A stretch of 63,971 nt of DNA, counting the filler, from Sluysia triapertura (taxonomy: Eukaryota), in assembly GCA_046118255.1 (NCBI GenBank). It is 4 parts of 4 records of this genome, joined end to end, with 100 filler letters (N's around TTAATTAATTAA, not from the genome) between each part and the next. Parts side by side here need not be neighbours in the genome. Positions count along the whole stretch, not along the records: positions 12,340 to 40,265 come from JBJNIA010011095.1; 3 more parts are not named here. One strand, 5' to 3'. Below the pieces are notes generated by a model. It had not been told where the DNA came from and ran no database searches. It saw only the letters and a list, made by a program, of their open reading frames with translations. The position numbers were made by a program, and so were the translations under genes. Shown in pieces: positions 16,003-39,200 of the stretch. Every line of letters starts with the position of its first letter. The first letter of the stretch is position 1.

Positions 16003-16850
16003 TGTTTCTTAATGTAAAGGAAGAATTTAACTTACAGATACTCGAAAATAATATCAAAATGATTGATTTCAAATCGTGTAAATCAGGATATTTTTTCAGC
16101 CGGATCACAAATAATACCAAAATCAAATTATCTTCTTTGTTGGAATATTTCGGAAACAATTAAAAAAACGAAACAAAAGTCATTCTTGAATTCGCAGGAA
16201 CCAAATGATCAAATCGTGTAAGTCAATTTATTTTCTTCACAGGAACAAAATGATTTATCAACAATTCGCTGTCTTTTTGCAATTAATTGAATAGTATATC
16301 AGCTAAAAAAAGTTGTCGAATTAATACTAACTAATATTACTATATGACTATTCTTAAGTCAACATAAGTAATTATCTATTTATTTAGGTAACAAAATATG
16401 GAATTCTCATGGTATTTATTTTAAATTATTTATTTTTTAGATAATAGCATAACAGGATATCTGGTAACTTATTATGTTTAACTGATAATTTTATTTTTTT
16501 AGATTACCAAATGTCAAGCTCTCGGGTTATGTGTTTTATATTTATTTATTATTATAATTTATAATAATAATAATTATTTTTTAGATTCCATATTTTGTGA
16601 TCATCTATATTATGTGATCCTGACAAATAATTAGAAAGATCAGATTCCGTTTTCTACTATTTTATTGTCGAATTATTTTTCAGAGTATTGTTTAGAAATA
16701 ATGTGTTTAAAACTATTTCAATGTCTCTTTATTAAATTATCCATACTAATGTAGTTATATTTTTATTTTAATTCACATTATTTTTAATTTAATATTATTT
16801 TTTTTACTGAAATTGTTTAAATATTATTTAATGATAAAATAAACTGCGAT

Positions 16851-18888
16851 ATGTTAGATATATGTAAATTAACAAAAAATGAAGTTAGTCGTTATGGTCG
16901 TCAAATCATAGTGGGAGATTTTGGTGTTAACAGTAAATGGTTTTATTTCGTTACTAAATATCTCATTTTTTTATTAGCTCAATATAATTTACGAGATGCC
17001 ACTATATTAGTCATTGGTTTTAATGATATTACGAAATGTGCTGTTATTTATTTAGCAGCTGCTGGAATTGGAAAAATTAAATTGTTTTATAATCACGCAG
17101 AAATTTATGAATTGAAGTGCGATATAACAAAATTGAATTCTGCAGTACAAGTTGAATTTATTCAAGAATTGTCTAAAAAGGATAAATTTGATGCTATATT
17201 ATTGAATGAAGACTGTAAAGACATAGCATGTAAAGGTCCTATTTTTCAATCGGAAATAGATGGCTCGGTTTGCCGTTTAAGGTTACTTTTAGAAAGTGAT
17301 AATTTGTCGGATTGTAATGCTAAATATGAGTCTAAATGTGTTGGGTGTTCCGATTTAATGGGTTTGTTTCAAGCTACTGAAGTTATAAAATATATTGGTA
17401 AATTAGGTAAAGTAAAGCAAACATTTACATTTGACATAAATGAACATAAATTTACAAAAAAAATGGATTCTAAAAATCACTTAAAAGAAAAAAAGCTAAA
17501 TTCCGTTTTAATTGTTGGTTGTGGAGGTCTTGGATGTCCAGCCGCACATACAATTGCTAATTCTGGTTGTTTTTCAACAATAGGTTTAGTAGATAATGAT
17601 GTTGTTGAAGAATCTAATTTGCACAGACAAGTTTATCACAACGAAGAACGAATTGGAATGCTAAAAACCGAATCTTTGAAATGGCACATTGGAAAGTAAT
17701 GTATTTAGAATAATTAGTAATTATTTATTTAGAATAAATTCTAATTTAAATGTAGAAACTTTTAATGCTCGATTACGACGTGATAATGCAATAGATATTA
17801 TTAAAAAGTAAGCTTATATTTCTGTCACGATATAAATATTAGGTATGATGTCATATTAGATTGTACTGATAATATTCCCACGAGTTATCTGGTTAGCGAT
17901 TGTTGTGTATTGCTGCAGAAACCTCTTGTTAAGGGAAATGCACTTAAATTAGCTGGTCATTTAGCAGTTTATTGTTACCGAGGTAGTCCTTGTTATCGAT
18001 GTATTATTCCAACACCGCCGGATGTTGTGGGTAATTGTGCTGATAATGGAGTACTTGGATCAGTGCCCGGTGTCATGGGAACTTTGCAGGCAATTGAAGC
18101 TATCAAAATTGTATCCGGTAAAGAATGTATGGCTGGTCAATTCCTTTTATAATGCTTTATCGAGTGATATTCGAGTTTTTAAACTCGGTAATCGGAAATC
18201 CAATTGTTTGGCTTGCGGGAGTAACTTAGATAATCGTATAAATATGAATTTAATGGATTATCGGGAATTTTGTGGCATGCCTGATGATGATAATGCTTGC
18301 AAATCAATTCGATTGTTGGAACCTCATGAACGAATTTCCGTTGAGGTTAGTTGCTTTATTTAATGCTTTATAATTATAATTATTGGTTGAAATGTTTAGA
18401 TAAAAAATTTAAAGTATGTTAAAGAAATGATATTAGGCCGAGTAAAATTTATTGACTTTGAATATTCTCCGTGTGTATCGTTTAAAGCCTTCCTGAAAAG
18501 AATGAATGTTATTGTTATAAACATGTTTGGTGCAGTTTAGAATTACGTTTCTTTGTGTGGTCACATAAAATTTTATTGTTTAACTGTACATGAAAAGGAC
18601 CTTTTCATCGTATCATATTTGATAAGGTGTTATGTGTAGTGTATGTCTCTTCCACATGATGTTTGTCCAAAGTCTCGTTATGGATGACTTGTATCTAAAC
18701 AAGAAATGAGCCTCTTATTGTCATTTTAAATTCTTATTGTTTTCCGATTTTGAAACATTTCACTGATATATTTATTTTATTTTTAATTCAGGAATATCAG
18801 CAAGTAGTCATCAGTGGTCAGATACATGTCTTGTTAGATGTGCGTCCAAAAGAACAGCGCGATATTTGCCGAATTAAAAATTGTTTAG
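16851..18888 (+). CDS. MOCS3: MOCS3/UBA4-like adenylyltransferase-sulfurtransferase with an extra degenerate N-terminal ThiF domain. Exons 16851-16932, 16978-17695, 17733-17807, 17843-18345, 18792-18888; 3' end not found; frameshift at ~18148
   Basis: Motifs [83 protein letters not shown] and rhodanese start [12 protein letters not shown] introns restore the frame at each junction. Confidence 0.9.
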
Positions 18889-21699
18889 GTTATATTTTAT
18901 TCGAATTTGATAATACATTTGATTTTTCCAAAAACTGTTATTCTAAGTCATGTCTTAACTGATGCGATTTTGAAGCTGCAATTTCGATTTAGAAAAAACG
19001 AATGTTTTCACTACATTCCAACAACCTCAATGAGAATTGAACGTTTTTAATAGTTTTGGTTATCCAGCCAAACTGGATAATAAAATTTTATAGAGTGCTT
19101 TAATAATCTAAGAACATGGGCGTGCGCATTACTTTTTATAATCATTAATAAACATGTGGAATCTGTAACTCCTTCGATGAAAATTGGTCACTTAGTATTA
19201 TATAATCGAGAAAACACAGCAATAAGCACAAAGAGATGTGTTATAAAAATAAACTCGATGGTCGAATTAGAGAGTGATGTTTAATAAATGAAACAAAGTA
19301 TTGTATTGCTGGTAATTTAGTGCTGGGTTTTACAACGTTTAGGATAAAATAGAGAATTTGAACTTAGTCTAGAATCTGATTTAGAAACACCCTTAGTATG
19401 AGATTCCTTTACATTTATTGTCATAAGTAAGGTATTCGAAATTTAAAAATAAGTTAAATAATTGAATAAAAATTAATTTAGTTTACTACACAATCAAAAT
19501 AACTTGAATACAAAACTTTTAGTAAAATAGGTTAAGTATAGATCGACATGTTCGAAATGGATCAAATCTAATTGCCATGAAATTCAAATATTTATAAGAA
19601 CGAGTAGAATGTCGATGGTGTGAATTAGAATAACCACCTAGTCTTACCAAATCGTTGAAATTAATATACATCAATCAGGTTTACTAATGGCTAATGAACT
19701 AGTTGTAGTTATATTTTGCTGCATGATTAGTTTTAACCCTAATAATATTGAATTATTAAAACTTGGCTTTGTAAGCCAGGTGTGTTTTAATTATAAGAGA
19801 CCCAACAGAATATCATCCTACTAATATTTATCATTTCTATAATATGTAAAAATAAGAAAGTTCATTTAGCCAGATATCAAGAGAAGCACCACAAATAAGT
19901 ATAAGTATAAATATAAATACAAGATTAAAGCCAGTACATTTTCCGATGTTGAAATTGTATATATTAACATGACTGCGTTAAAAGAAGTACGCGGTTTTAC
20001 AAGTACGTGCTTTGAAAAAAATTGAATTAAATAAATTTAACAATTAATCACTATATATATTCACTCTAAACAATATAAAATAACTTAATTAATTCAACAC
20101 AAAAAATATAAAAATATATAATAGCAATAATTAGTTTAACAGGTACTTAAAAATTTAAGATGATTTTAACCTAGCGTTTTTACGGTCTAGGAAAGTTTAT
20201 AAAGTTTAAGTGTATTTTATTTTCAGCAAGTTGATATCAGAAATTAAACTTATTTCAAATAATTCTTAGTTATAAATTGTCAATATGACTACAAATCCCT
20301 CTTCTATTTATATGGTTTTTTCTGCTACCACATTAACTATTTACAACTGTCTATTAATTACTTCAAATAAACAAAACTTACAATTTTCTTTATCTAATAA
20401 TATAAAACAAATTTATAATTTTCTTTAATTATTTAAAAATTTTAATTAAAAAGTTATAATATATTTTATATATAATAATTTACATTTAAATATTTAATTT
20501 ATACATTTAATATTTTATTTAAAATTTTATTTTAAAAATTTATTAATATTTTATTTAATATAATAACTATAAAGATTTAAAAAAGTAAACAATAAATTAA
20601 GTAATAAAATTAATTACAGAAATATTTTTACAAATAATAAACAAAAAATTATAAGTAATAAATCAACTCAACATGATAAATAAAGTCATATTCATACTTG
20701 CTCAAATCTGAAAACAGGTAGAGTTTGAAGTGTATTTTGTCCCAAAATCAATATTATTATCGTGGAATCTTGTATTATAGTTATTTTAACAGTTGGCTAT
20801 ATTACAAATTTTATTAATCACAAAACAAAGTGTTTGAAACCTAAGCAATTCACGAACAAAAATGTGCAGATCAATAAATGACTTCCAGAATACTAATTTC
20901 AATATTTTTCAATGATAATAAAATGAGGTGACAAATTTTTTACTTGATAAACTCCATAAACGCCACCATTTATAAAATTTCATTTGCACATCTAAATTAA
21001 AGACTGATTTTTATCTATGATAATTCAAATTGTTTTTACAAAGTATCATAGAATTATCATACACTATGGAAATTCAATTTTATTCAGTAAAAAATGAAAA
21101 TTCTGCAAACAGCAGAAAAAAGCTACATTATAAAACAACATCAAACATTGAATCTTAAATTTTGCTATAGACCATTATTCCTAAGAAAAATTAAATTATA
21201 AATAAATTATATAAAACTTAAGTGATTTGAAAAAAATAATGCACTTGATAAAAAATATTGGACCCTCTACGATTAATTATCGTTTATAACAAAAATCATT
21301 ACATGATTTATATTGGTAGTTTTGAGAGTGCTATCAGTTAGTTTTATTGTATTCACTAGTAATAGATAATAAGGAATAACACGTGAGCCTCAAAATATCC
21401 ATTCAGTATATTTTACTTTACCTTGACTGTAGTCTGTAACAATTTTTAATAATAATGTTAACAATTTTAATAATAATAATATTAATCGAATTAATAATAA
21501 TATACCAACCTGGAAGACGATGACGACAATATTAAATTTTCCAAAAAATTCTTTAAAATTATAATTTCCGATAATTAATATTTAATTCAGTATTTTTGAA
21601 ATTCTAAACTTAAATTAAATATTTAAATATTCAAATTATAAATGTCTAAACATTTAAATTTACATTAATATTTAGACTTTAACCACTAATGTTTAATTA

Positions 21700-29523: not shown

Positions 29524-30807
29524 TTACATTAGAAATTTACTAACTGGTGTTACCGATCTAGATTCAGAAAAGTCAGTTCCTGACATGTCATTCAAATCAC
29601 ATAATTTGTTAGAAGCATCACTCCCTCTACCTTTGCCAGCATCATCACTATTAATATCGTTATACTTTACATGAACACCCTGTTCGGTAGGAAATAAAAC
29701 CGCAAACTGAGATCGTTCTTTAACAATATATTCTTCATAATTTATTGACGAAGTAACAGAACTTGTTGCACAATTATCGTCCTCTTCGTCTATTTGAGTC
29801 ATAGAATGAGTATCATAAGCATCAAATGACATTCCACCAACTTGAGTTGATTGAGTCTGTTGTTGAGATGTACTAACTGAATTAATACTTTCTGGCCCAT
29901 ATAAAGGTGAATTCATTTCGTCATTCTGTGGTTTACATCGAAAACAATTAATAAAACCTTTTCTAAAAGACTTAAAAAACATTAAAGTTATCAAAAATGG
30001 AATTAATGAAAAATAACAACGCAAAATATAGAAATGAAACTGATATTCTGGCAATAACTTATTAGCATATAATGTAATCAAATATGGTGAAAACGCACCG
30101 ATCCATAAACAATGTAAAATGAAAGAATAAACACCAAGACGAATTTCTTTTTTTAAAAATTTTGGTTTACCTGCTCCAGTTATATTCAATAAATTCCGTT
30201 GTTGCACTATTAATTTGAGCACAGTTACGTAAATAGAAAATGAAATTAAACAAGGTGCCAATAATAACATTATAAATAAACTCAAAGAATACCCAATATA
30301 TTCATTGAAACTAGGAACACAAGTAAAAGTACTATTCAGATACTTTGAAGGAATTTTTAATATTAGTGGTATACAAAAACAAGCTGATATCAACCATATG
30401 ATAACTAATGATAAAATAATAATTTTTGTTTGACTAAATAAACTTCTAGATTTCTTATTAATCACTGCCATGATAGCGGCCAAACGATCAATTGATAATA
30501 ACAACAATGTTACTGATAAACAAATCGTTGTAAAAGTGATCACAAAAGACTGTGAAAGACAAATTGGATCATTTATACTAACATATTCATTCTTTGAAGC
30601 CCATATTAAATTGATTATTTGTACAAAACCAGAATCAATTAAGATCATAAACAAAAAATTAATCAATAACTTAAAATGAGACTGTTTTCTTAATTTAATA
30701 TTGTAAAATAATATTCCTAAATGAATACTGTTTAGTAATAAAGATAAGAAAACATCACAAACAGTTAAACCAATAAATAGATATTCTTGACTTGTTAGAT
30801 TTGTATT
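29524..30807 (-). CDS. Orphan rhodopsin-class (class A) GPCR, main coding exon; upstream start exon not identified
   Basis: Seven hydrophobic segments once the frame is extended to the ttttag acceptor at 30807 (TM1 ...LSLLLNSIHLGILF, then KLRK). Also C3.25, SIDRL (DRY-like), TM4 IWLIS...P, ECL2 Cys, TM5 Pro, TM6 LW...SPY and helix-8 FRKGF. Confidence 0.85.
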   Translation of the reverse strand, partial: NTNLTSQEYLFIGLTVCDVFLSLLLNSIHLGILFYNIKLRKQSHFKLLINFLFMILIDSGFVQIINLIWASKNEYVSINDPICLSQSFVITFTTICLSVTLLLLSIDRLAAIMAVINKKSRSLFSQTKIIILSLVIIWLISACFCIPLILKIPSKYLNSTFTCVPSFNEYIGYSLSLFIMLLLAPCLISFSIYVTVLKLIVQQRNLLNITGAGKPKFLKKEIRLGVYSFILHCLWIGAFSPYLITLYANKLLPEYQFHFYILRCYFSLIPFLITLMFFKSFRKGFINCFRCKPQNDEMNSPLYGPESINSVSTSQQQTQSTQVGGMSFDAYDTHSMTQIDEEDDNCATSSVTSSINYEEYIVKERSQFAVLFPTEQGVHVKYNDINSDDAGKGRGSDASNKLCDLNDMSGTDFSESRSVTPVSKFLM

Positions 30808-36235: not shown

Positions 36236-39200
36236 CTATATCCTATTACTCCAACATCATCACCCAATGTAATCTATATGATATGCTCTAATAACAATTA
36301 TAATGGATCAAAGAGACCAAGAATAAATGCTAGAAAAAGGGTAGAATAAACAGCACTAAGTGATACAGGAACAGTAGCCTCCTTAATCAACGAAAACGTC
36401 TTAAATAAAGATGAATTAAAAAATTTAACTAATCATACCTCTCGTCTTTCAGGAGTTACAGGCGATGCAATTAATATAACTGGGGTAATGCGAATTAGGA
36501 CAAAATAGATTAGAAATTAAATTAAGAGTTATGAAAAATGTCCAGAAGAAATGATAGTGAGAATAGACATTTTGTCTCAGTTAAAAAGAGTAACATTAGA
36601 TTTCGACCAAGTAAAATTAATGGATAGTGGATCAAAAAGAATTATTGATGATGATGACGTATACGTAGATGAACCAATCTGGTTAGTAAAAAGAAGTGAA
36701 TATATTGCAGGTCAAGACAAACAGTCTATTAACCGGAAATATCATGTTTATTACATCAGAGATTAATCAAGAGAAGTTAGATATAGGAATAGCTAGTGCA
36801 GTGTAAAATAATTGCGAAGAGAAAATACCCGTTAGGATTATAAACTACACAAATGACAATAAATGGCTTTATATAGGGACAAAATTAGGAAAAATAGTTA
36901 AATATACAATACCAGCACATATTAACTTAATTTCGGAAAATAAAAGTAAAAAACGATAAAAAGTAACATAAAATTACAACATGAGATACAAGACGAAGAC
37001 TATGGCGAAATATAAATTATTAATAAGAATTTAACTAGGAATCAGACAGATCAGTTATATAGTATCAAGAGAAATAGCGAGAAATAAGTGCGACATTGGA
37101 GATTCTGTAATAATAAAACACTAGATAGCGCTAATAATAGATAAAGTAATCCGAAAAAGCCATACAGAGTACCGATATGTAATCAAAAGGAGATGCAAGA
37201 ACAAATAGATACTATGAAAAAATCCGGAGTGATAAGACCAAGCATCTCACCTTTCTCATCTCCAGTTTTATTAGTTAAGAAAAAAGATAGTACAATGAGA
37301 TTTTGTATAGATTTTAGAGAATTAAACAAGGTACCAAGAAAAGACATATTTTCTTTACCAAGAATAGATGAAATGTTGGACGAATTAGGAAACTCCACAA
37401 ACTTTACAACTGTTGATCTACAAAGCGGTTATTGGCAAATCGAAATCGCTGAAAAAGATAAACATAAAACCGCACCTGCAACTTTCCAAAGGTGCATGAA
37501 TTTCGTACTATCAGGATGTAAAATGTTATGGTATACAAAGATTTCGAACCACTTATAAAAGATATTGACAATATTCTAAATAGACTGGAAATAGCTAAGT
37601 TGAAAATTAAACCAACAAAATGCGTTTGGGCTGAGAAAAAAGTCGAGTTTTTAGGACACATAATGTCAAAAGATGGAATAAAGCCCAATTCGAGAAACAT
37701 AGAAAAATTAGTAAAATTTCCACAACCCGATAATGTAAAAAAGATTCAATGTTTTTTAGGATTAGCTAATTACTAGAGAAGATTTGTTAAAAATTTTGCT
37801 AAGATAGCACAACCACTCAGGAAGTTAACACGAAAAAATGTCGAATTTAAGTGGACTAATGAACAAACTAAAGCGTTTAAGGAATTGAAAGAACGACTAA
37901 CTACGGCACCAATACTAATTTTTCCAGATATTAATAAACCATTTATATTGACTACTGGTGTTATTGATGTAATCTTAGGACAGAAAGACAAAAACAATTT
38001 AGAAGCAATAATTGCGTACGCTAGTCGACGACTAAATAAGGCCGAGATGAATTATTCGACCACTAAAAGAGAATGTTTGGCTATTGTACACGCATACAAA
38101 TTATTTAGGCATTATTTATTAGGACAGATAGTTTATTTATATACTGATATCAAGCGGCTGACCTATTTGTATAATCACAAGGAGGAGATCAGCAGATTAA
38201 ACAGATGGTTTAATAAATTAGCAGAGTATAATAATGGTGCAGATTGTATGTCACGCTTAACTAATGTAGATGATAAAGGAAATATTAATTATATACAAAT
38301 AATGTCAATATCAGAGAAGATAAAGATACCGCTTATATTATAGATTCATTAGCGAAGGAAACCTTAATTGAAAGTCAAGCAATCACTGATGGAATGCTTA
38401 GATTTAGAAATTCAAAAGATGAATGGAAAACAGTTGTCCCTAAATCATTAGTAACACAAATATTAATACAATTTCATGATGGACATCTGTCTAAGAGAAA
38501 AACACTATCCAGAATAAAAGACAAGTATTATTGGGAAGATATGGAAGATGATATTACAAATTGTTGTAAAAATTGTTCAATATACTACAGGAGAAAAAAT
38601 ACGGGAACAGGGTCAAATGTACCATTAAAACCTATGCCTGTACCAATGCCACCAATGGAATTCACATAAATGGACATAATGGGACCACTATCGGAAACCA
38701 TTAATGGAAATAAATATATTATTGTGTTTGCTGATTATCTAACAAAGGCAGAAACTGTAGCACAAATACTTGTGAAGAAAATAATTTATAGATATGGTAC
38801 ACCAAGGAAATTATTGACGGATCAAGGTAAAAATTTTACAAGCGATATAATTAAATCAGTAGCAAAAATATTTAACATTCTTAGAATCTAAATATTACCT
38901 TATCATCCACATACAGATTGATTAGTTGAACAATTCAATCGGACACGAATAAATATGTTACAATCATATATTAATGATAGACAATCCTACTGGCACTTAT
39001 ATTGCACCATGTTTATTCTCTTATAGAAGTTTGGTACATCCAGCTACGAATTTCACACCATTTTATTTGATGTATGGACGACATTCTAATATGCCTGTAG
39101 ACTTAGAATGGATACCACCAATGACATAATACGTGGAAACACCAGAGTACGTGACAGTAATGCATGGAAGCGTGCTGGCTTACAAATAAAGTTTTCACAA

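What the first reader, a model, noticed from the sequence alone, without database searches (positions are those of the whole stretch)
16851..18345. MOCS3/Uba4 rebuilt as a single-chain pseudo-dimer (inactive plus active adenylation domains)
Seen: two ThiF/MoeB repeats in one frame. Repeat 1 keeps the N-terminal RYGRQ helix, [10 protein letters not shown] and the terminal [13 protein letters not shown] helix, but has lost GxGxxG (VIGFNDI), SNLxRQ and DxxDN. Repeat 2 has GCGGLG, SNLHRQ, DCTDN, both CxxC motifs and the crossover Cys, but starts at LNSVLIVG with no RYxRQ helix. Known: MoeB/ThiF/Uba4 are homodimers in which the Arg of the N-terminal helix completes the partner's ATP site, and canonical E1s (UBA1, APPBP1-UBA3, SAE1-SAE2) use an inactive domain to supply it. 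Inference: complementary degeneration after internal duplication has convergently produced the canonical E1 layout in the Urm1/MOCS2A-activating enzyme.
Basis: partly seen in the sequence, partly recalled or inferred. Interest (0 to 1): 0.82.

Follow-up and report, generated by a model that had tools for sequence, protein, structure and literature searches.

The report
Tandem dead-plus-live MOCS3 adenylation domains
A MOCS3/Uba4-type gene of an AT-rich animal has a shrunken, catalytically dead copy of its adenylation domain in front of the live one, which is the layout of ubiquitin E1 enzymes; but this copy of the gene is damaged and lacks its sulfur-transfer end, so whether it works that way is open.

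Summary
ORF 16851-17695 encodes a degenerate ThiF/MoeB domain (aa 1-199), in frame with the start of a catalytically complete MOCS3 adenylation domain. That second domain continues over two micro-introns to about 18216. Repeat 1 keeps the RYGRQ helix, [10 protein letters not shown] and QATEVIKYI, and has lost GxGxxG, SNLxRQ and DxxDN. Repeat 2 shows the reverse pattern.

Repeat 1 is a real coding sequence: P(open by chance) is about 4e-9 and it has codon-position GC periodicity. It models as a ThiF fold.

The E1-like reading is plausible but unproven. The window has a frameshift (4 T at 18145-18148; the only public run mostly has 6 T, which restores the frame). That run's main contig carries a 36-nt GT..AG insert with an in-frame stop exactly at the repeat 1/repeat 2 border. 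No rhodanese active-site exon exists in 12340-40265. No eukaryotic relative with repeat 1 was found.

I also found an unannotated clostridial family, linked to NifU, with the same dead-plus-live tandem. It has the same pattern of retained residues, and its predicted fold matches UBA1 best.

Verdict: a real, unusual architecture, in a gene copy of doubtful integrity.

The parts
16851..17447 (+). Repeat 1: degenerate, catalytically dead ThiF/MoeB domain (aa 1-199) carrying the start codon
   Evidence: hhalign vs MOCS3 profile E 7e-12. Three collinear HMM blocks. AF2 pLDDT 78.9, pTM 0.79. Foldseek top hits are ThiF, MoeB and Uba4. GC1/2/3 are 0.39/0.29/0.18, and P(open by chance) is 4e-9.
16890..16904 (+). 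RYGRQ, the Arg-finger helix of repeat 1 (Arg17 corresponds to CtUba4 Arg18)
   Evidence: PMC7527816.
16933..16977 (+). In-frame 45-nt GT..AG candidate intron. Removing it gives the canonical 10-residue spacing between GV and ILVIG. It is not skipped in the run's main contig.
   Evidence: Sequence. Two relatives, P0011 and P0268, read through an intron at the same position. Contig record 2 is continuous over 16836-17456.
17010..17030 (+). VIGFNDI, the degenerate remnant of the GxGxxG nucleotide loop of repeat 1
17049..17078 (+). [10 protein letters not shown] helix, kept in repeat 1 and lost in repeat 2 ([10 protein letters not shown])
17358..17396 (+). [13 protein letters not shown], the last helix of repeat 1
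17456..17457 (+). Border of repeat 1 and repeat 2 (..KFT|KKMDSK..). The public run's main contig has 36 extra bases here (GTAAGT..TTGTAG, with the in-frame stop GTA AGT TAA) that are absent from the window.
   Evidence: tables 5 and 5c; the 36-mer is not elsewhere in the window.
17463..17465 (+). Internal ATG, 6 nt after the border. It is a possible start of a separate repeat-2 protein if the 36-nt insert is retained or used as a trans-splice acceptor.
   Evidence: Sequence; inference.
17490..17695 (+). Repeat 2, first exon part: beta1, GCGGLG, SNLHRQ, LKTES (the live adenylation domain)
   Evidence: Pfam ThiF E 1.3e-21; 99.5 bits vs the MOCS3 HMM; 67-69% identity to mite and flatworm MOCS3.
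17696..17732 (+). 37-nt intron (GT..AG)
   Evidence: Skipped in the run's contig.
17733..17807 (+). Repeat 2, second exon ([25 protein letters not shown])
17808..17842 (+). 35-nt intron (GT..AG)
   Evidence: Skipped in the run's contig.
17843..18345 (+). Repeat 2, third exon: DCTDN, CYRC, crossover-loop Cys, LQAIEAIKI, then (after the frameshift) CLAC and the MOCS3 linker [15 protein letters not shown]
   Evidence: Pfam ThiF E 5e-25; 139 and 41 bits vs the MOCS3 HMM.
18145..18148 (+). T-run with the frameshift. The window has 4 T. The run's contig has 6 T (depth 65.9 of 100.5), which restores ..GQFLFYNALS..
   Evidence: table 4.
18346..18791 (+). 446-nt intron
   Evidence: Joint 18343>18790 in the run.
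18792..18962 (+). Start of the rhodanese domain ([19 protein letters not shown]..). The frame then runs into a stop at 18960-18962. No active-site exon (CRRGNxSQ) or GGxxAW follows anywhere in the piece.

Best explanation
This is a MOCS3/Uba4-derived gene of an AT-rich animal with 35-37-nt micro-introns. The N-terminus is most like flatworm MOCS3; the taxon is my inference. The adenylation domain occurs twice in tandem.

Copy 1 carries the gene's original start, the Arg-finger helix RYGRQ, an old intron position, and a shrunken ThiF fold without nucleotide-binding or catalytic residues. Copy 2 is a catalytically complete MOCS3 adenylation domain. It has lost its own Arg-finger helix and the otherwise invariant Tyr-Leu of YLAAAG.

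The most likely working model is an asymmetric, E1-like pair: the dead domain packs where the second subunit of a Uba4 homodimer would sit and gives Arg17 to the single live ATP site. This would be one chain if the 36-nt GT..AG insert seen in reads is spliced out; the window's sequence equals that spliced product. It would be two chains if the insert is kept.

Shown: the two domains, their complementary losses, the coding constraint on copy 1, and a read-derived contig joining both. Inferred: the packing, the Arg donation, and any activity.

The copy in the window is not an intact Uba4. It has a frameshift and no rhodanese active site. At best the locus encodes a MoeB-like adenylating enzyme that needs sulfur from elsewhere.
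For: - Domain identity of copy 1.
- Complementary residues, set against the CtUba4 site Gly45/Arg77/Lys90/Asp134 plus Arg18 of the partner subunit. Copy 2 has the G, R, K and D; copy 1 has only the Arg-finger helix.
- Coding constraint on copy 1: 199 stop-free codons at 9.2% stop probability per codon (P 4e-9). GC1>GC2>GC3 as in the true exons, but flat in the flanks. All gaps between the collinear similarity blocks keep the frame.
- Non-uniform retention: of 72 columns at least 85% conserved in MOCS3, copy 1 keeps 24. Fourteen of these are among the 17 kept by the dead N-domain of an unrelated bacterial tandem family (Fisher P 2.6e-6).
- That bacterial family shows the layout is viable. ORF1 aligns collinearly to it across both domains (hhalign E 9e-31). 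Its AF2 model has pTM 0.88. Its best structural matches are UBA1, UBA6 and UBA7 over both domains (TM 0.60-0.65, against 0.44-0.45 for single ThiF chains).
- The run's contig record 2 is continuous from 16836 through repeat 1 into spliced repeat-2 exons, with 0 mismatches.
Against: - The run's main contig has a 36-nt insert with an in-frame stop between the copies. The insert-free junction has only about 3.5 extra depth in its bin.
- Contigs are not single molecules and give one depth per contig, so repeat 1 could be upstream pre-mRNA.
- The window has a frameshift at 18145-18148, and part of the run's depth (34.6 of 100.5) also lacks the extra TT.
- There is no rhodanese active-site exon in 21 kb downstream. 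Depth continues past 18897, as for a 3' UTR.
- Copy 2 has also lost the invariant R133 (TRYL>TSYL), S149 and Q158.
- No eukaryotic protein with copy 1 was found among 1.84 billion representatives or in two word searches.
- The linker from FD to VLIVG is about 23 residues, against about 42 in the bacterial family.
- The pseudo-dimer of this protein itself was not modelled.
Confidence: 0.4

Rival explanations
1. Decaying paralogue or pseudogene. The locus is a partial, rearranged copy of MOCS3 (a duplicated adenylation segment with a truncated rhodanese domain). It is transcribed but no longer makes a working enzyme, and the organism's real Uba4 lies elsewhere.
For: The window has a frameshift. 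The run's main form has an in-frame stop in the 36-nt insert. The rhodanese domain ends after about 35-55 residues with no active-site Cys. Copy 2 has lost five otherwise invariant residues. At least two versions of the locus exist, differing in intron content.
Against: Copy 2 keeps every catalytic and Zn-binding residue and scores about 300 bits against the MOCS3 HMM. Copy 1 stayed open and in frame through many indels, with codon periodicity. The 6-T form restores the frame. Retention in copy 1 is strongly non-uniform and matches a functional dead domain elsewhere.
Confidence: 0.3
2. Passenger extension. Only copy 2 matters. Copy 1 is a dead remnant kept open only because it holds the start codon upstream of copy 2. 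It has no partner role.
For: Selection for translation of copy 2 alone would explain the open frame and the in-frame deletions. The middle of copy 1 is barely recognisable (hhalign E 0.0011 for aa 80-199 alone).
Against: [15 protein letters not shown] and QATEVIKYI are near-perfectly kept beside stretches of about 15% identity, and the kept set overlaps that of the bacterial dead domain. Copy 2 lacks its own Arg finger, which Uba4 needs from a partner. The internal ATG at 17463 would let the extension be dropped.
Confidence: 0.15
3. Two products from one locus. The 36-nt insert is not removed. Copy 1 (about 204 aa, ending ..KFTVS*) and copy 2 (from ATG 17463, perhaps after trans-splicing at ..TTGTAG) are made separately. 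They may act as a heterodimer of the SAE1-SAE2 or NAE1-UBA3 kind, or copy 2 may act alone.
For: The insert-bearing path is the one kept in the run's contig, while the two neighbouring micro-introns are spliced. An ATG follows the insert by 6 nt. A short spliced leader would be clipped in contig assembly, so it could not be seen here (my knowledge of assemblers; inference).
Against: The insert has exact GT..AG ends and the modal micro-intron length. The window lacks it precisely and then reads in frame, as after splicing. Reinitiation after a 204-codon ORF is inefficient. No spliced-leader loose end was listed at 17457, although only 6 of 29 loose ends were shown.
Confidence: 0.15
4. Copy 1, or the whole tandem, was acquired from the bacterial tandem-ThiF family rather than by internal duplication.
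For: ORF1 aligns end to end with that family (E 9e-31). The core of copy 1 scores slightly better on its N-domain HMM (36.5 bits) than on the MOCS3 adenylation-domain HMM (26.7 bits).
Against: The N-terminus of copy 1 is MOCS3-like (17.0 vs 9.4 bits), resembles that of Schistosoma MOCS3, and keeps a eukaryotic intron position. Copy 2 is eukaryotic MOCS3: SNLHRQ, 67-69% identity to animal MOCS3, plus the MOCS3 linker and rhodanese start. The better score is explained by shared gaps. Composition and introns are those of the host.
Confidence: 0.03

Closest known systems
MOCS3 / Uba4 (e.g. Chaetomium thermophilum Uba4, PDB 6YUB/6YUC; PMC7527816)
   Same: Copy 2 has the full adenylation-domain signature, the crossover-loop Cys, both CxxC pairs, the MOCS3 linker and the start of the rhodanese domain. 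The best sequence hits are animal MOCS3.
   Different: Uba4 is a symmetric homodimer with two ATP sites, each completed by the partner's Arg18. Here a second, dead domain precedes the live one in the same ORF. The live one has no Arg-finger helix, and the rhodanese active site is missing from the window.
Canonical E1 enzymes (UBA1/UBA6/UBA7 as a single chain; NAE1-UBA3 and SAE1-SAE2 as two chains)
   Same: An inactive adenylation domain lies N-terminal to, or is partnered with, an active one, giving one ATP site per pseudo-dimer.
   Different: There is no Cys domain inserted in the crossover loop, no FCCH and no ubiquitin-fold domain. It is of independent and much more recent origin from within MOCS3. 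Packing was not tested for this protein.
Bacterial E1 BilD of Bil antiviral systems (PMC10557695)
   Same: [quoted passage not shown]
   Different: BilD has a helical CYS domain and works with an E2. That paper states that ThiF, MoeB and Cap2 are homodimers. The protein here is MOCS3-derived and eukaryotic.
Clostridial tandem ThiF family found here (P0152, P0154, P0157, P0160 and others, 447-495 aa; NifU-fused P0259 = MBG0763632.1, 'ThiF family adenylyltransferase')
   Same: Collinear dead-plus-live layout. The same residues are kept in the dead domain (RYxR, GQ, Y..A.G.G, E..K). The same Tyr of YLAAAG and the Gln of EGQ are lost in the live domain. There is no rhodanese active site.
   Different: It is bacterial, with a MoeB-type live domain (SNLNRQ), a longer inter-domain linker, and a NifU/IscU gene next to it or fused to it. 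The relation to the window's gene is most likely convergence.
E. coli MoeB / ThiF (PDB 1JW9, 1ZUD)
   Same: An adenylation domain without a rhodanese domain. They are the best fold matches of copy 1.
   Different: They are homodimers of identical active domains.

Membership tests
ThiF/MoeB/E1 adenylation domain (Pfam PF00899) | Score above the Pfam gathering cut-off (28.1 bits) | tested here: met
   Copy 2 scores 77.3 bits (17448-17696) and 88.5 bits (17844-18149). Copy 1 alone scores 22.4 bits, below the cut-off. It is recognised only by profile-profile comparison (E 7e-12) and by fold.
ThiF/MoeB/E1 adenylation domain (Pfam PF00899) | GxGxxG nucleotide loop, Arg of SNLxRQ, Lys, and Asp of DxxDN | tested here: met
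   Met in copy 2 (GCGGLG, SNLHRQ, LKTES, DCTDN). Not met in copy 1 (VIGFNDI; the other three are deleted).
MOCS3/Uba4 | C-terminal rhodanese domain with the active-site Cys (CRRGNxSQ) and GGxxAW | tested here: not met
   Only the first ~35 residues of the domain are found (18792-18896), followed by a stop at 18960. There is no hit by HMM, tblastn or motif scan in 12340-40265 on either strand. An exon beyond the piece cannot be excluded.
MOCS3/Uba4 | Arg-finger helix (RYxRQ) directly preceding the active domain | tested here: not met
   Copy 2 is preceded by ..[26 protein letters not shown] sits on copy 1.
MOCS3/Uba4 | Crossover-loop Cys and two CxxC pairs | tested here: met
   NCAD 18033-18044, CYRC 17991-18002 and CLAC 18205-18216. 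CLAC is in frame only in the 6-T form.
MOCS3/Uba4 | Uninterrupted reading frame | tested here: not met
   The window has a frameshift in the T-run 18145-18148. The run's main contig has a stop in the 36-nt insert at 17456/17457.
MOCS3/Uba4 | Symmetric homodimer | not testable with these tools
   This needs the protein itself or a multimer model.
Canonical E1 layout (inactive + active adenylation domain pseudo-dimer) | A dead domain N-terminal to a live domain in one reading frame | tested here: met
   The 282-codon ORF 16851-17696 spans all of copy 1 and the start of copy 2.
Canonical E1 layout (inactive + active adenylation domain pseudo-dimer) | The two domains pack as the ThiF dimer, with the dead domain's Arg in the live ATP site | not tested
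   Only copy 1 was folded. The bacterial analogue folds that way.
Canonical E1 layout (inactive + active adenylation domain pseudo-dimer) | Cys domain in the crossover loop, and a ubiquitin-fold domain | tested here: not met
   The crossover region of copy 2 has MOCS3 length. No further domains were found.
Clostridial tandem ThiF family (alignment A3) | Collinear match over both domains | tested here: met
   hhalign prob 99.9%, E 8.8e-31, 258 columns.
Clostridial tandem ThiF family (alignment A3) | Common descent: the live domain is of the same MoeB type and there is no rhodanese linker | tested here: not met
   Copy 2 is animal MOCS3 (67-69% identity, [14 protein letters not shown] linker, rhodanese start). 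The N-helix of copy 1 fits MOCS3 better.

The most novel reading that the evidence does not exclude
The animal's Urm1/MOCS2A activator really works as an asymmetric enzyme with a dead and a live adenylation domain (one chain, or two chains from one locus). That would be an independent and evolutionarily young origin of the E1 layout from a homodimeric Uba4, paralleled by the NifU-linked clostridial family found here.
Probability: 0.3. Interest if true: 0.75.

Novelty: new variant of a known kind. Interest (0 to 1): 0.5.

Why it matters
Textbook accounts derive canonical E1 enzymes from a MoeB/ThiF-like homodimer by duplication and complementary loss, but intermediates are lacking. Uba4/MOCS3 is cited precisely as the eukaryotic enzyme that stayed a symmetric homodimer (PMC7527816).

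A MOCS3 whose dead copy keeps the Arg finger, while the live copy has lost it, would be a young natural replay of that step. It could be tested with simple mutants. The clostridial family suggests the same solution arose in sulfur-carrier activation in bacteria.

The value is limited by the state of this gene copy: it has a frameshift, a stop-bearing insert in reads, and no rhodanese active site. It is also limited by the lack of relatives.

Tried and rejected
- BLASTP of repeat 1 against the start of repeat 2 found nothing (E 0.63). There is also no DNA-level repeat between them. If this was a duplication, it is old.
- A word search with repeat 1 alone found only bacterial MoeB-like proteins at 22-28% identity, none significant.
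- phmmer of repeat 1 against PDB sequences gave nothing significant. ThiF and archaeal PCNA both came at E about 0.03; I take the PCNA hits as noise, since Pfam shows none.
- I considered splicing from the donor at 16933 to an acceptor at 17487/17488. It would give an in-frame, near-canonical single-domain MOCS3 ([14 protein letters not shown], 3 residues short). The run's main contig does not show it, but a minor isoform cannot be excluded.
- The search for the rest of the rhodanese domain by HMM, tblastn and motifs was negative.
- Taxon: the GPCR-like ORF 29524-30666(-) has no homologue. There are no Rfam or tRNA hits.
- Bacterial origin of repeat 1 was considered and judged unlikely.
- The read data cannot be taken as clearly RNA. 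The run's kind is not on record. I read it as RNA because exon depth (~102) far exceeds the depth of the micro-introns (0-3) and of the upstream flank (3), and because GT..AG skips are present. DNA holding processed copies is not excluded.
Full report
**Gene model**

The piece is AT-rich (GC 0.19-0.33). It holds a plus-strand gene whose first ORF runs from ATG 16851 to 17695, 282 codons.
- Downstream exons are 17733-17807 and 17843-18345, after introns of 37 and 35 nt.
- A further exon starts at 18792, after a 446-nt intron.
- All three introns are skipped in contigs of the only public run that holds this stretch.
- I translated and searched every exon by reference.

**Is repeat 1 a ThiF domain?**

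- Pfam sees only aa 17-78 of repeat 1 (22.4 bits, below the 28.1 cut-off). It scores the two large pieces of repeat 2 at E 1e-21 and 5e-25.
- An HMM built from 79 full-length MOCS3 hits finds three collinear blocks in repeat 1: profile 28-87 at 35 bits, then the LNSAVQVE block and the QATEVIKYI block, both weak.
- hhalign of the core without the N-helix against 30 MOCS3 sequences aligns 139 columns over profile 31-225 (prob 97.5%, E 7e-12).
- Residues 80-199 alone give only E 0.0011.
- NCBIfam MoeB gives E 1.5e-9.
- With an alignment of MoeB and MOCS3 sequences, AlphaFold gives pLDDT 78.9 and pTM 0.79. Foldseek then ranks ThiF, MoeB, MccB and Uba4 first (E about 1e-10, TM 0.64-0.71). This is partly circular, because the alignment is made of ThiF proteins.

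So repeat 1 is a shortened adenylation domain of about 185 residues instead of about 235. It has deletions where SNLxRQ, the Lys loop, DxxDN-TRYL and the crossover/Zn region lie.

**Complementary losses**

- Repeat 2 has the first four: GCGGLG, SNLHRQ, LKTES and DCTDN. It also has the crossover Cys and both CxxC pairs.
- Repeat 2 is preceded by ..[21 protein letters not shown], not by RYxRQ. KFTKK may be a vestige, four residues out of register; that is my reading and has low weight.
- Repeat 1 has RYGRQ and none of the four.
- The Tyr-Leu of YLAAAG is invariant in 30 of 30 MOCS3 sequences. It is kept in repeat 1 and lost in repeat 2 (HTIANSG).
- Repeat 2 has also lost R133, S149 and Q158.

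**Constraint on repeat 1**

- With its own base composition a codon is a stop with probability 0.092, so 199 open codons have P 4e-9.
- The mean stop-free stretch in the piece is 11 codons.
- GC at codon positions 1/2/3 is 0.39/0.29/0.18. The exons of repeat 2 show the same pattern (0.45/0.34/0.17), while the flanks are flat at about 0.22.
- Similarity blocks across the whole of repeat 1 stay in one frame despite at least five gaps.
- This shows selection for an open frame. By itself that could merely protect translation of repeat 2.
- Retention, however, is very uneven. [10 protein letters not shown] matches the canonical motif almost perfectly, next to stretches of about 15% identity.

**Read evidence (one run, Logan contigs, kind not on record)**

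Record 2 is 1192 nt with 0 mismatches. It covers 16836-17456, then 36 bases absent from the window (GTAAGTTAATTGTTTTTTCTTAAGTGTACTTTGTAG), then 17457-17695, 17733-17807 and 17843-18063.
- Repeat 1 is therefore not spliced out in the main path, and the 45-nt candidate intron 16933-16977 is not removed.
- The insert sits exactly at the border ..KFT|KK.. and opens with GTA AGT TAA, an in-frame stop.
- It has GT..AG ends and the length of the neighbouring micro-introns. The window equals its precise removal and then reads in frame. This suggests that it is an intron and that the window's version has lost it.
- The insert-free junction adds only about 3.5 to the depth of its bin, against 102 for the contig.
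- A second contig has TT added after 18144 (depth 65.9 of 100.5). That turns the window's GQFLL* into GQFLFYNALS.. and restores the frame.
- Another contig leaves the window after 18123 with GTATGT.., again intron-like.
- Contigs with many differences lie in the flanks.

So at least two versions of this locus exist, and the window's version is the one with the frameshift.

I read the run as RNA. Exon depth is about 102, against 0-3 for the micro-introns and 3 upstream, and GT..AG skips are present. Three cautions apply:
- Contigs are not molecules.
- Each contig has a single depth figure.
- A short spliced leader would be clipped in assembly.

The run therefore neither proves a fused mRNA nor excludes separate messages.

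**Integrity**

Only about 35 residues of the rhodanese domain are recognisable (18792-18896). The frame then ends at 18960. Neither the MOCS3 HMM, nor tblastn with 79 rhodanese tails, nor motif scans find CRRGNxSQ or GGxxAW anywhere in 12340-40265. Depth continues past 18897, as in a 3' UTR. The window therefore does not encode a complete Uba4.

**Relatives**

- The word search with ORF1 finds animal MOCS3 (oribatid mites, flatworms) at 67-69% identity, on repeat 2 only.
- Repeat 1 alone finds nothing significant.
- The full HMMER search of 1.84 billion representatives finds no eukaryotic protein that covers repeat 1.
- That search does bring up a set of 447-495-residue proteins whose active ThiF domain starts near residue 240.

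These proteins are bacterial, from Clostridia and Tissierellales genomes assembled from metagenomes. One subgroup is fused to NifU and another lies next to a NifU_N gene. They are named only 'ThiF family adenylyltransferase'.
- Their N-domain keeps RYxR(H/Q), GQ, Y..A.G.G and E..K, and has lost GxGxxG, SNLxRQ and DxxDN.
- Their live domain has Ala in place of the YLAAAG Tyr and Leu in place of the EGQ Gln. These are the same two positions lost in the window's repeat 2.
- ORF1 aligns collinearly with this family over 258 columns (E 9e-31).
- Of 72 strongly conserved MOCS3 columns, repeat 1 keeps 24 and the bacterial N-domain keeps 17. Fourteen are shared (Fisher P 2.6e-6). The alignment is anchored on the retained residues, which inflates this figure somewhat.
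- AlphaFold folds P0157 with pTM 0.88. Its best PDB matches are UBA1, UBA6 and UBA7 over both domains (TM 0.60-0.65). Single ThiF chains cover half of it (TM 0.44-0.45).

The layout is thus viable and has arisen independently. A paper on BilD states that ThiF, MoeB and Cap2 are homodimers. I found no description of this family, and no solved structure of it.

**Origin**

- The N-terminus of repeat 1 fits MOCS3 better than the bacterial family (17.0 vs 9.4 bits).
- It resembles the Schistosoma MOCS3 N-terminus.
- Its 45-nt candidate intron lies where two other eukaryotic MOCS3 predictions read through an intron.
- Repeat 2 is plainly animal MOCS3.

An old tandem duplication inside MOCS3, or a fusion of two tandem copies, is therefore the simplest origin. 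Transfer from bacteria is unlikely. Repeat 1 has no introns at the positions of repeat 2's micro-introns. The 37-nt intron is largely a 24-nt tandem copy of the exon start that follows it, which hints at recent intron gain in repeat 2.

**Verdict**

The architecture is real, unusual for MOCS3/Uba4, and consistent in detail with an E1-like asymmetric pair.

Whether a single chain is made, and whether the locus is functional at all, remains open. I put the functional asymmetric-pair reading at about 0.4, a decaying paralogue at about 0.3, and the other rivals lower.

Left out: any search or fold of the joined, spliced and frame-corrected protein. That would have been the direct test of intramolecular packing.

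Noticed in passing
P0152, P0154, P0155, P0157, P0159, P0160, P0162, P0178, P0218, P0259 (alignment A3); L001:6001-7389: A bacterial (Clostridia/Tissierellales) family of 447-495-residue proteins with a dead N-terminal and a live C-terminal ThiF/MoeB domain and no rhodanese domain. The AF2 model has pTM 0.88, and its best fold matches are UBA1, UBA6 and UBA7 over both domains. It appears to be an undescribed single-chain 'mini-E1' of the sulfur-carrier type.
   Followed up: partly
L001:5601-5966 and P0259 residues 1-125: The bacterial tandem ThiF gene lies directly after a NifU_N (IscU-like) gene, near a PALP enzyme and an Rrf2 regulator. In one subgroup NifU is fused to its N-terminus. This points to a role in sulfur or Fe-S trafficking.
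   Followed up: partly
window 17456/17457, 18123/18124 and 18144: The public run holds a version of the locus with a 36-nt GT..AG insert, a second intron-like continuation after 18123, and 6 T instead of 4 T. So the versions of this locus differ in which introns they carry, or there are two paralogous copies.
   Followed up: partly
window 17699-17746: The 37-nt intron 17696-17732 consists largely of a 24-nt tandem copy (83% identical) of its own acceptor plus the start of the next exon. This is the pattern expected if the intron arose by tandem duplication. In AT-rich sequence it could be chance.
   Followed up: no
window 18821, 18841 and 18916-18967: The spliced contig of the run differs from the window at 18821 (synonymous) and 18841 (Val to Ala in the conserved DVR motif). 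A second contig differs at 7 positions plus a 1-nt deletion in 18916-18967, which suggests that this stretch is not under coding constraint.
   Followed up: no
window 29524-30666 (-): A 380-codon ORF with a weak rhodopsin-type 7TM match (Pfam E 7e-10) has no homologue at E<=0.001 in the word search of 5.8 billion proteins. It may be an orphan GPCR.
   Followed up: partly
window 37193-38669 (+): Fragments of a Ty3/gypsy-type retroelement (RVT_1, RT_RNaseH, Integrase_H2C2), broken into several ORFs.
   Followed up: no
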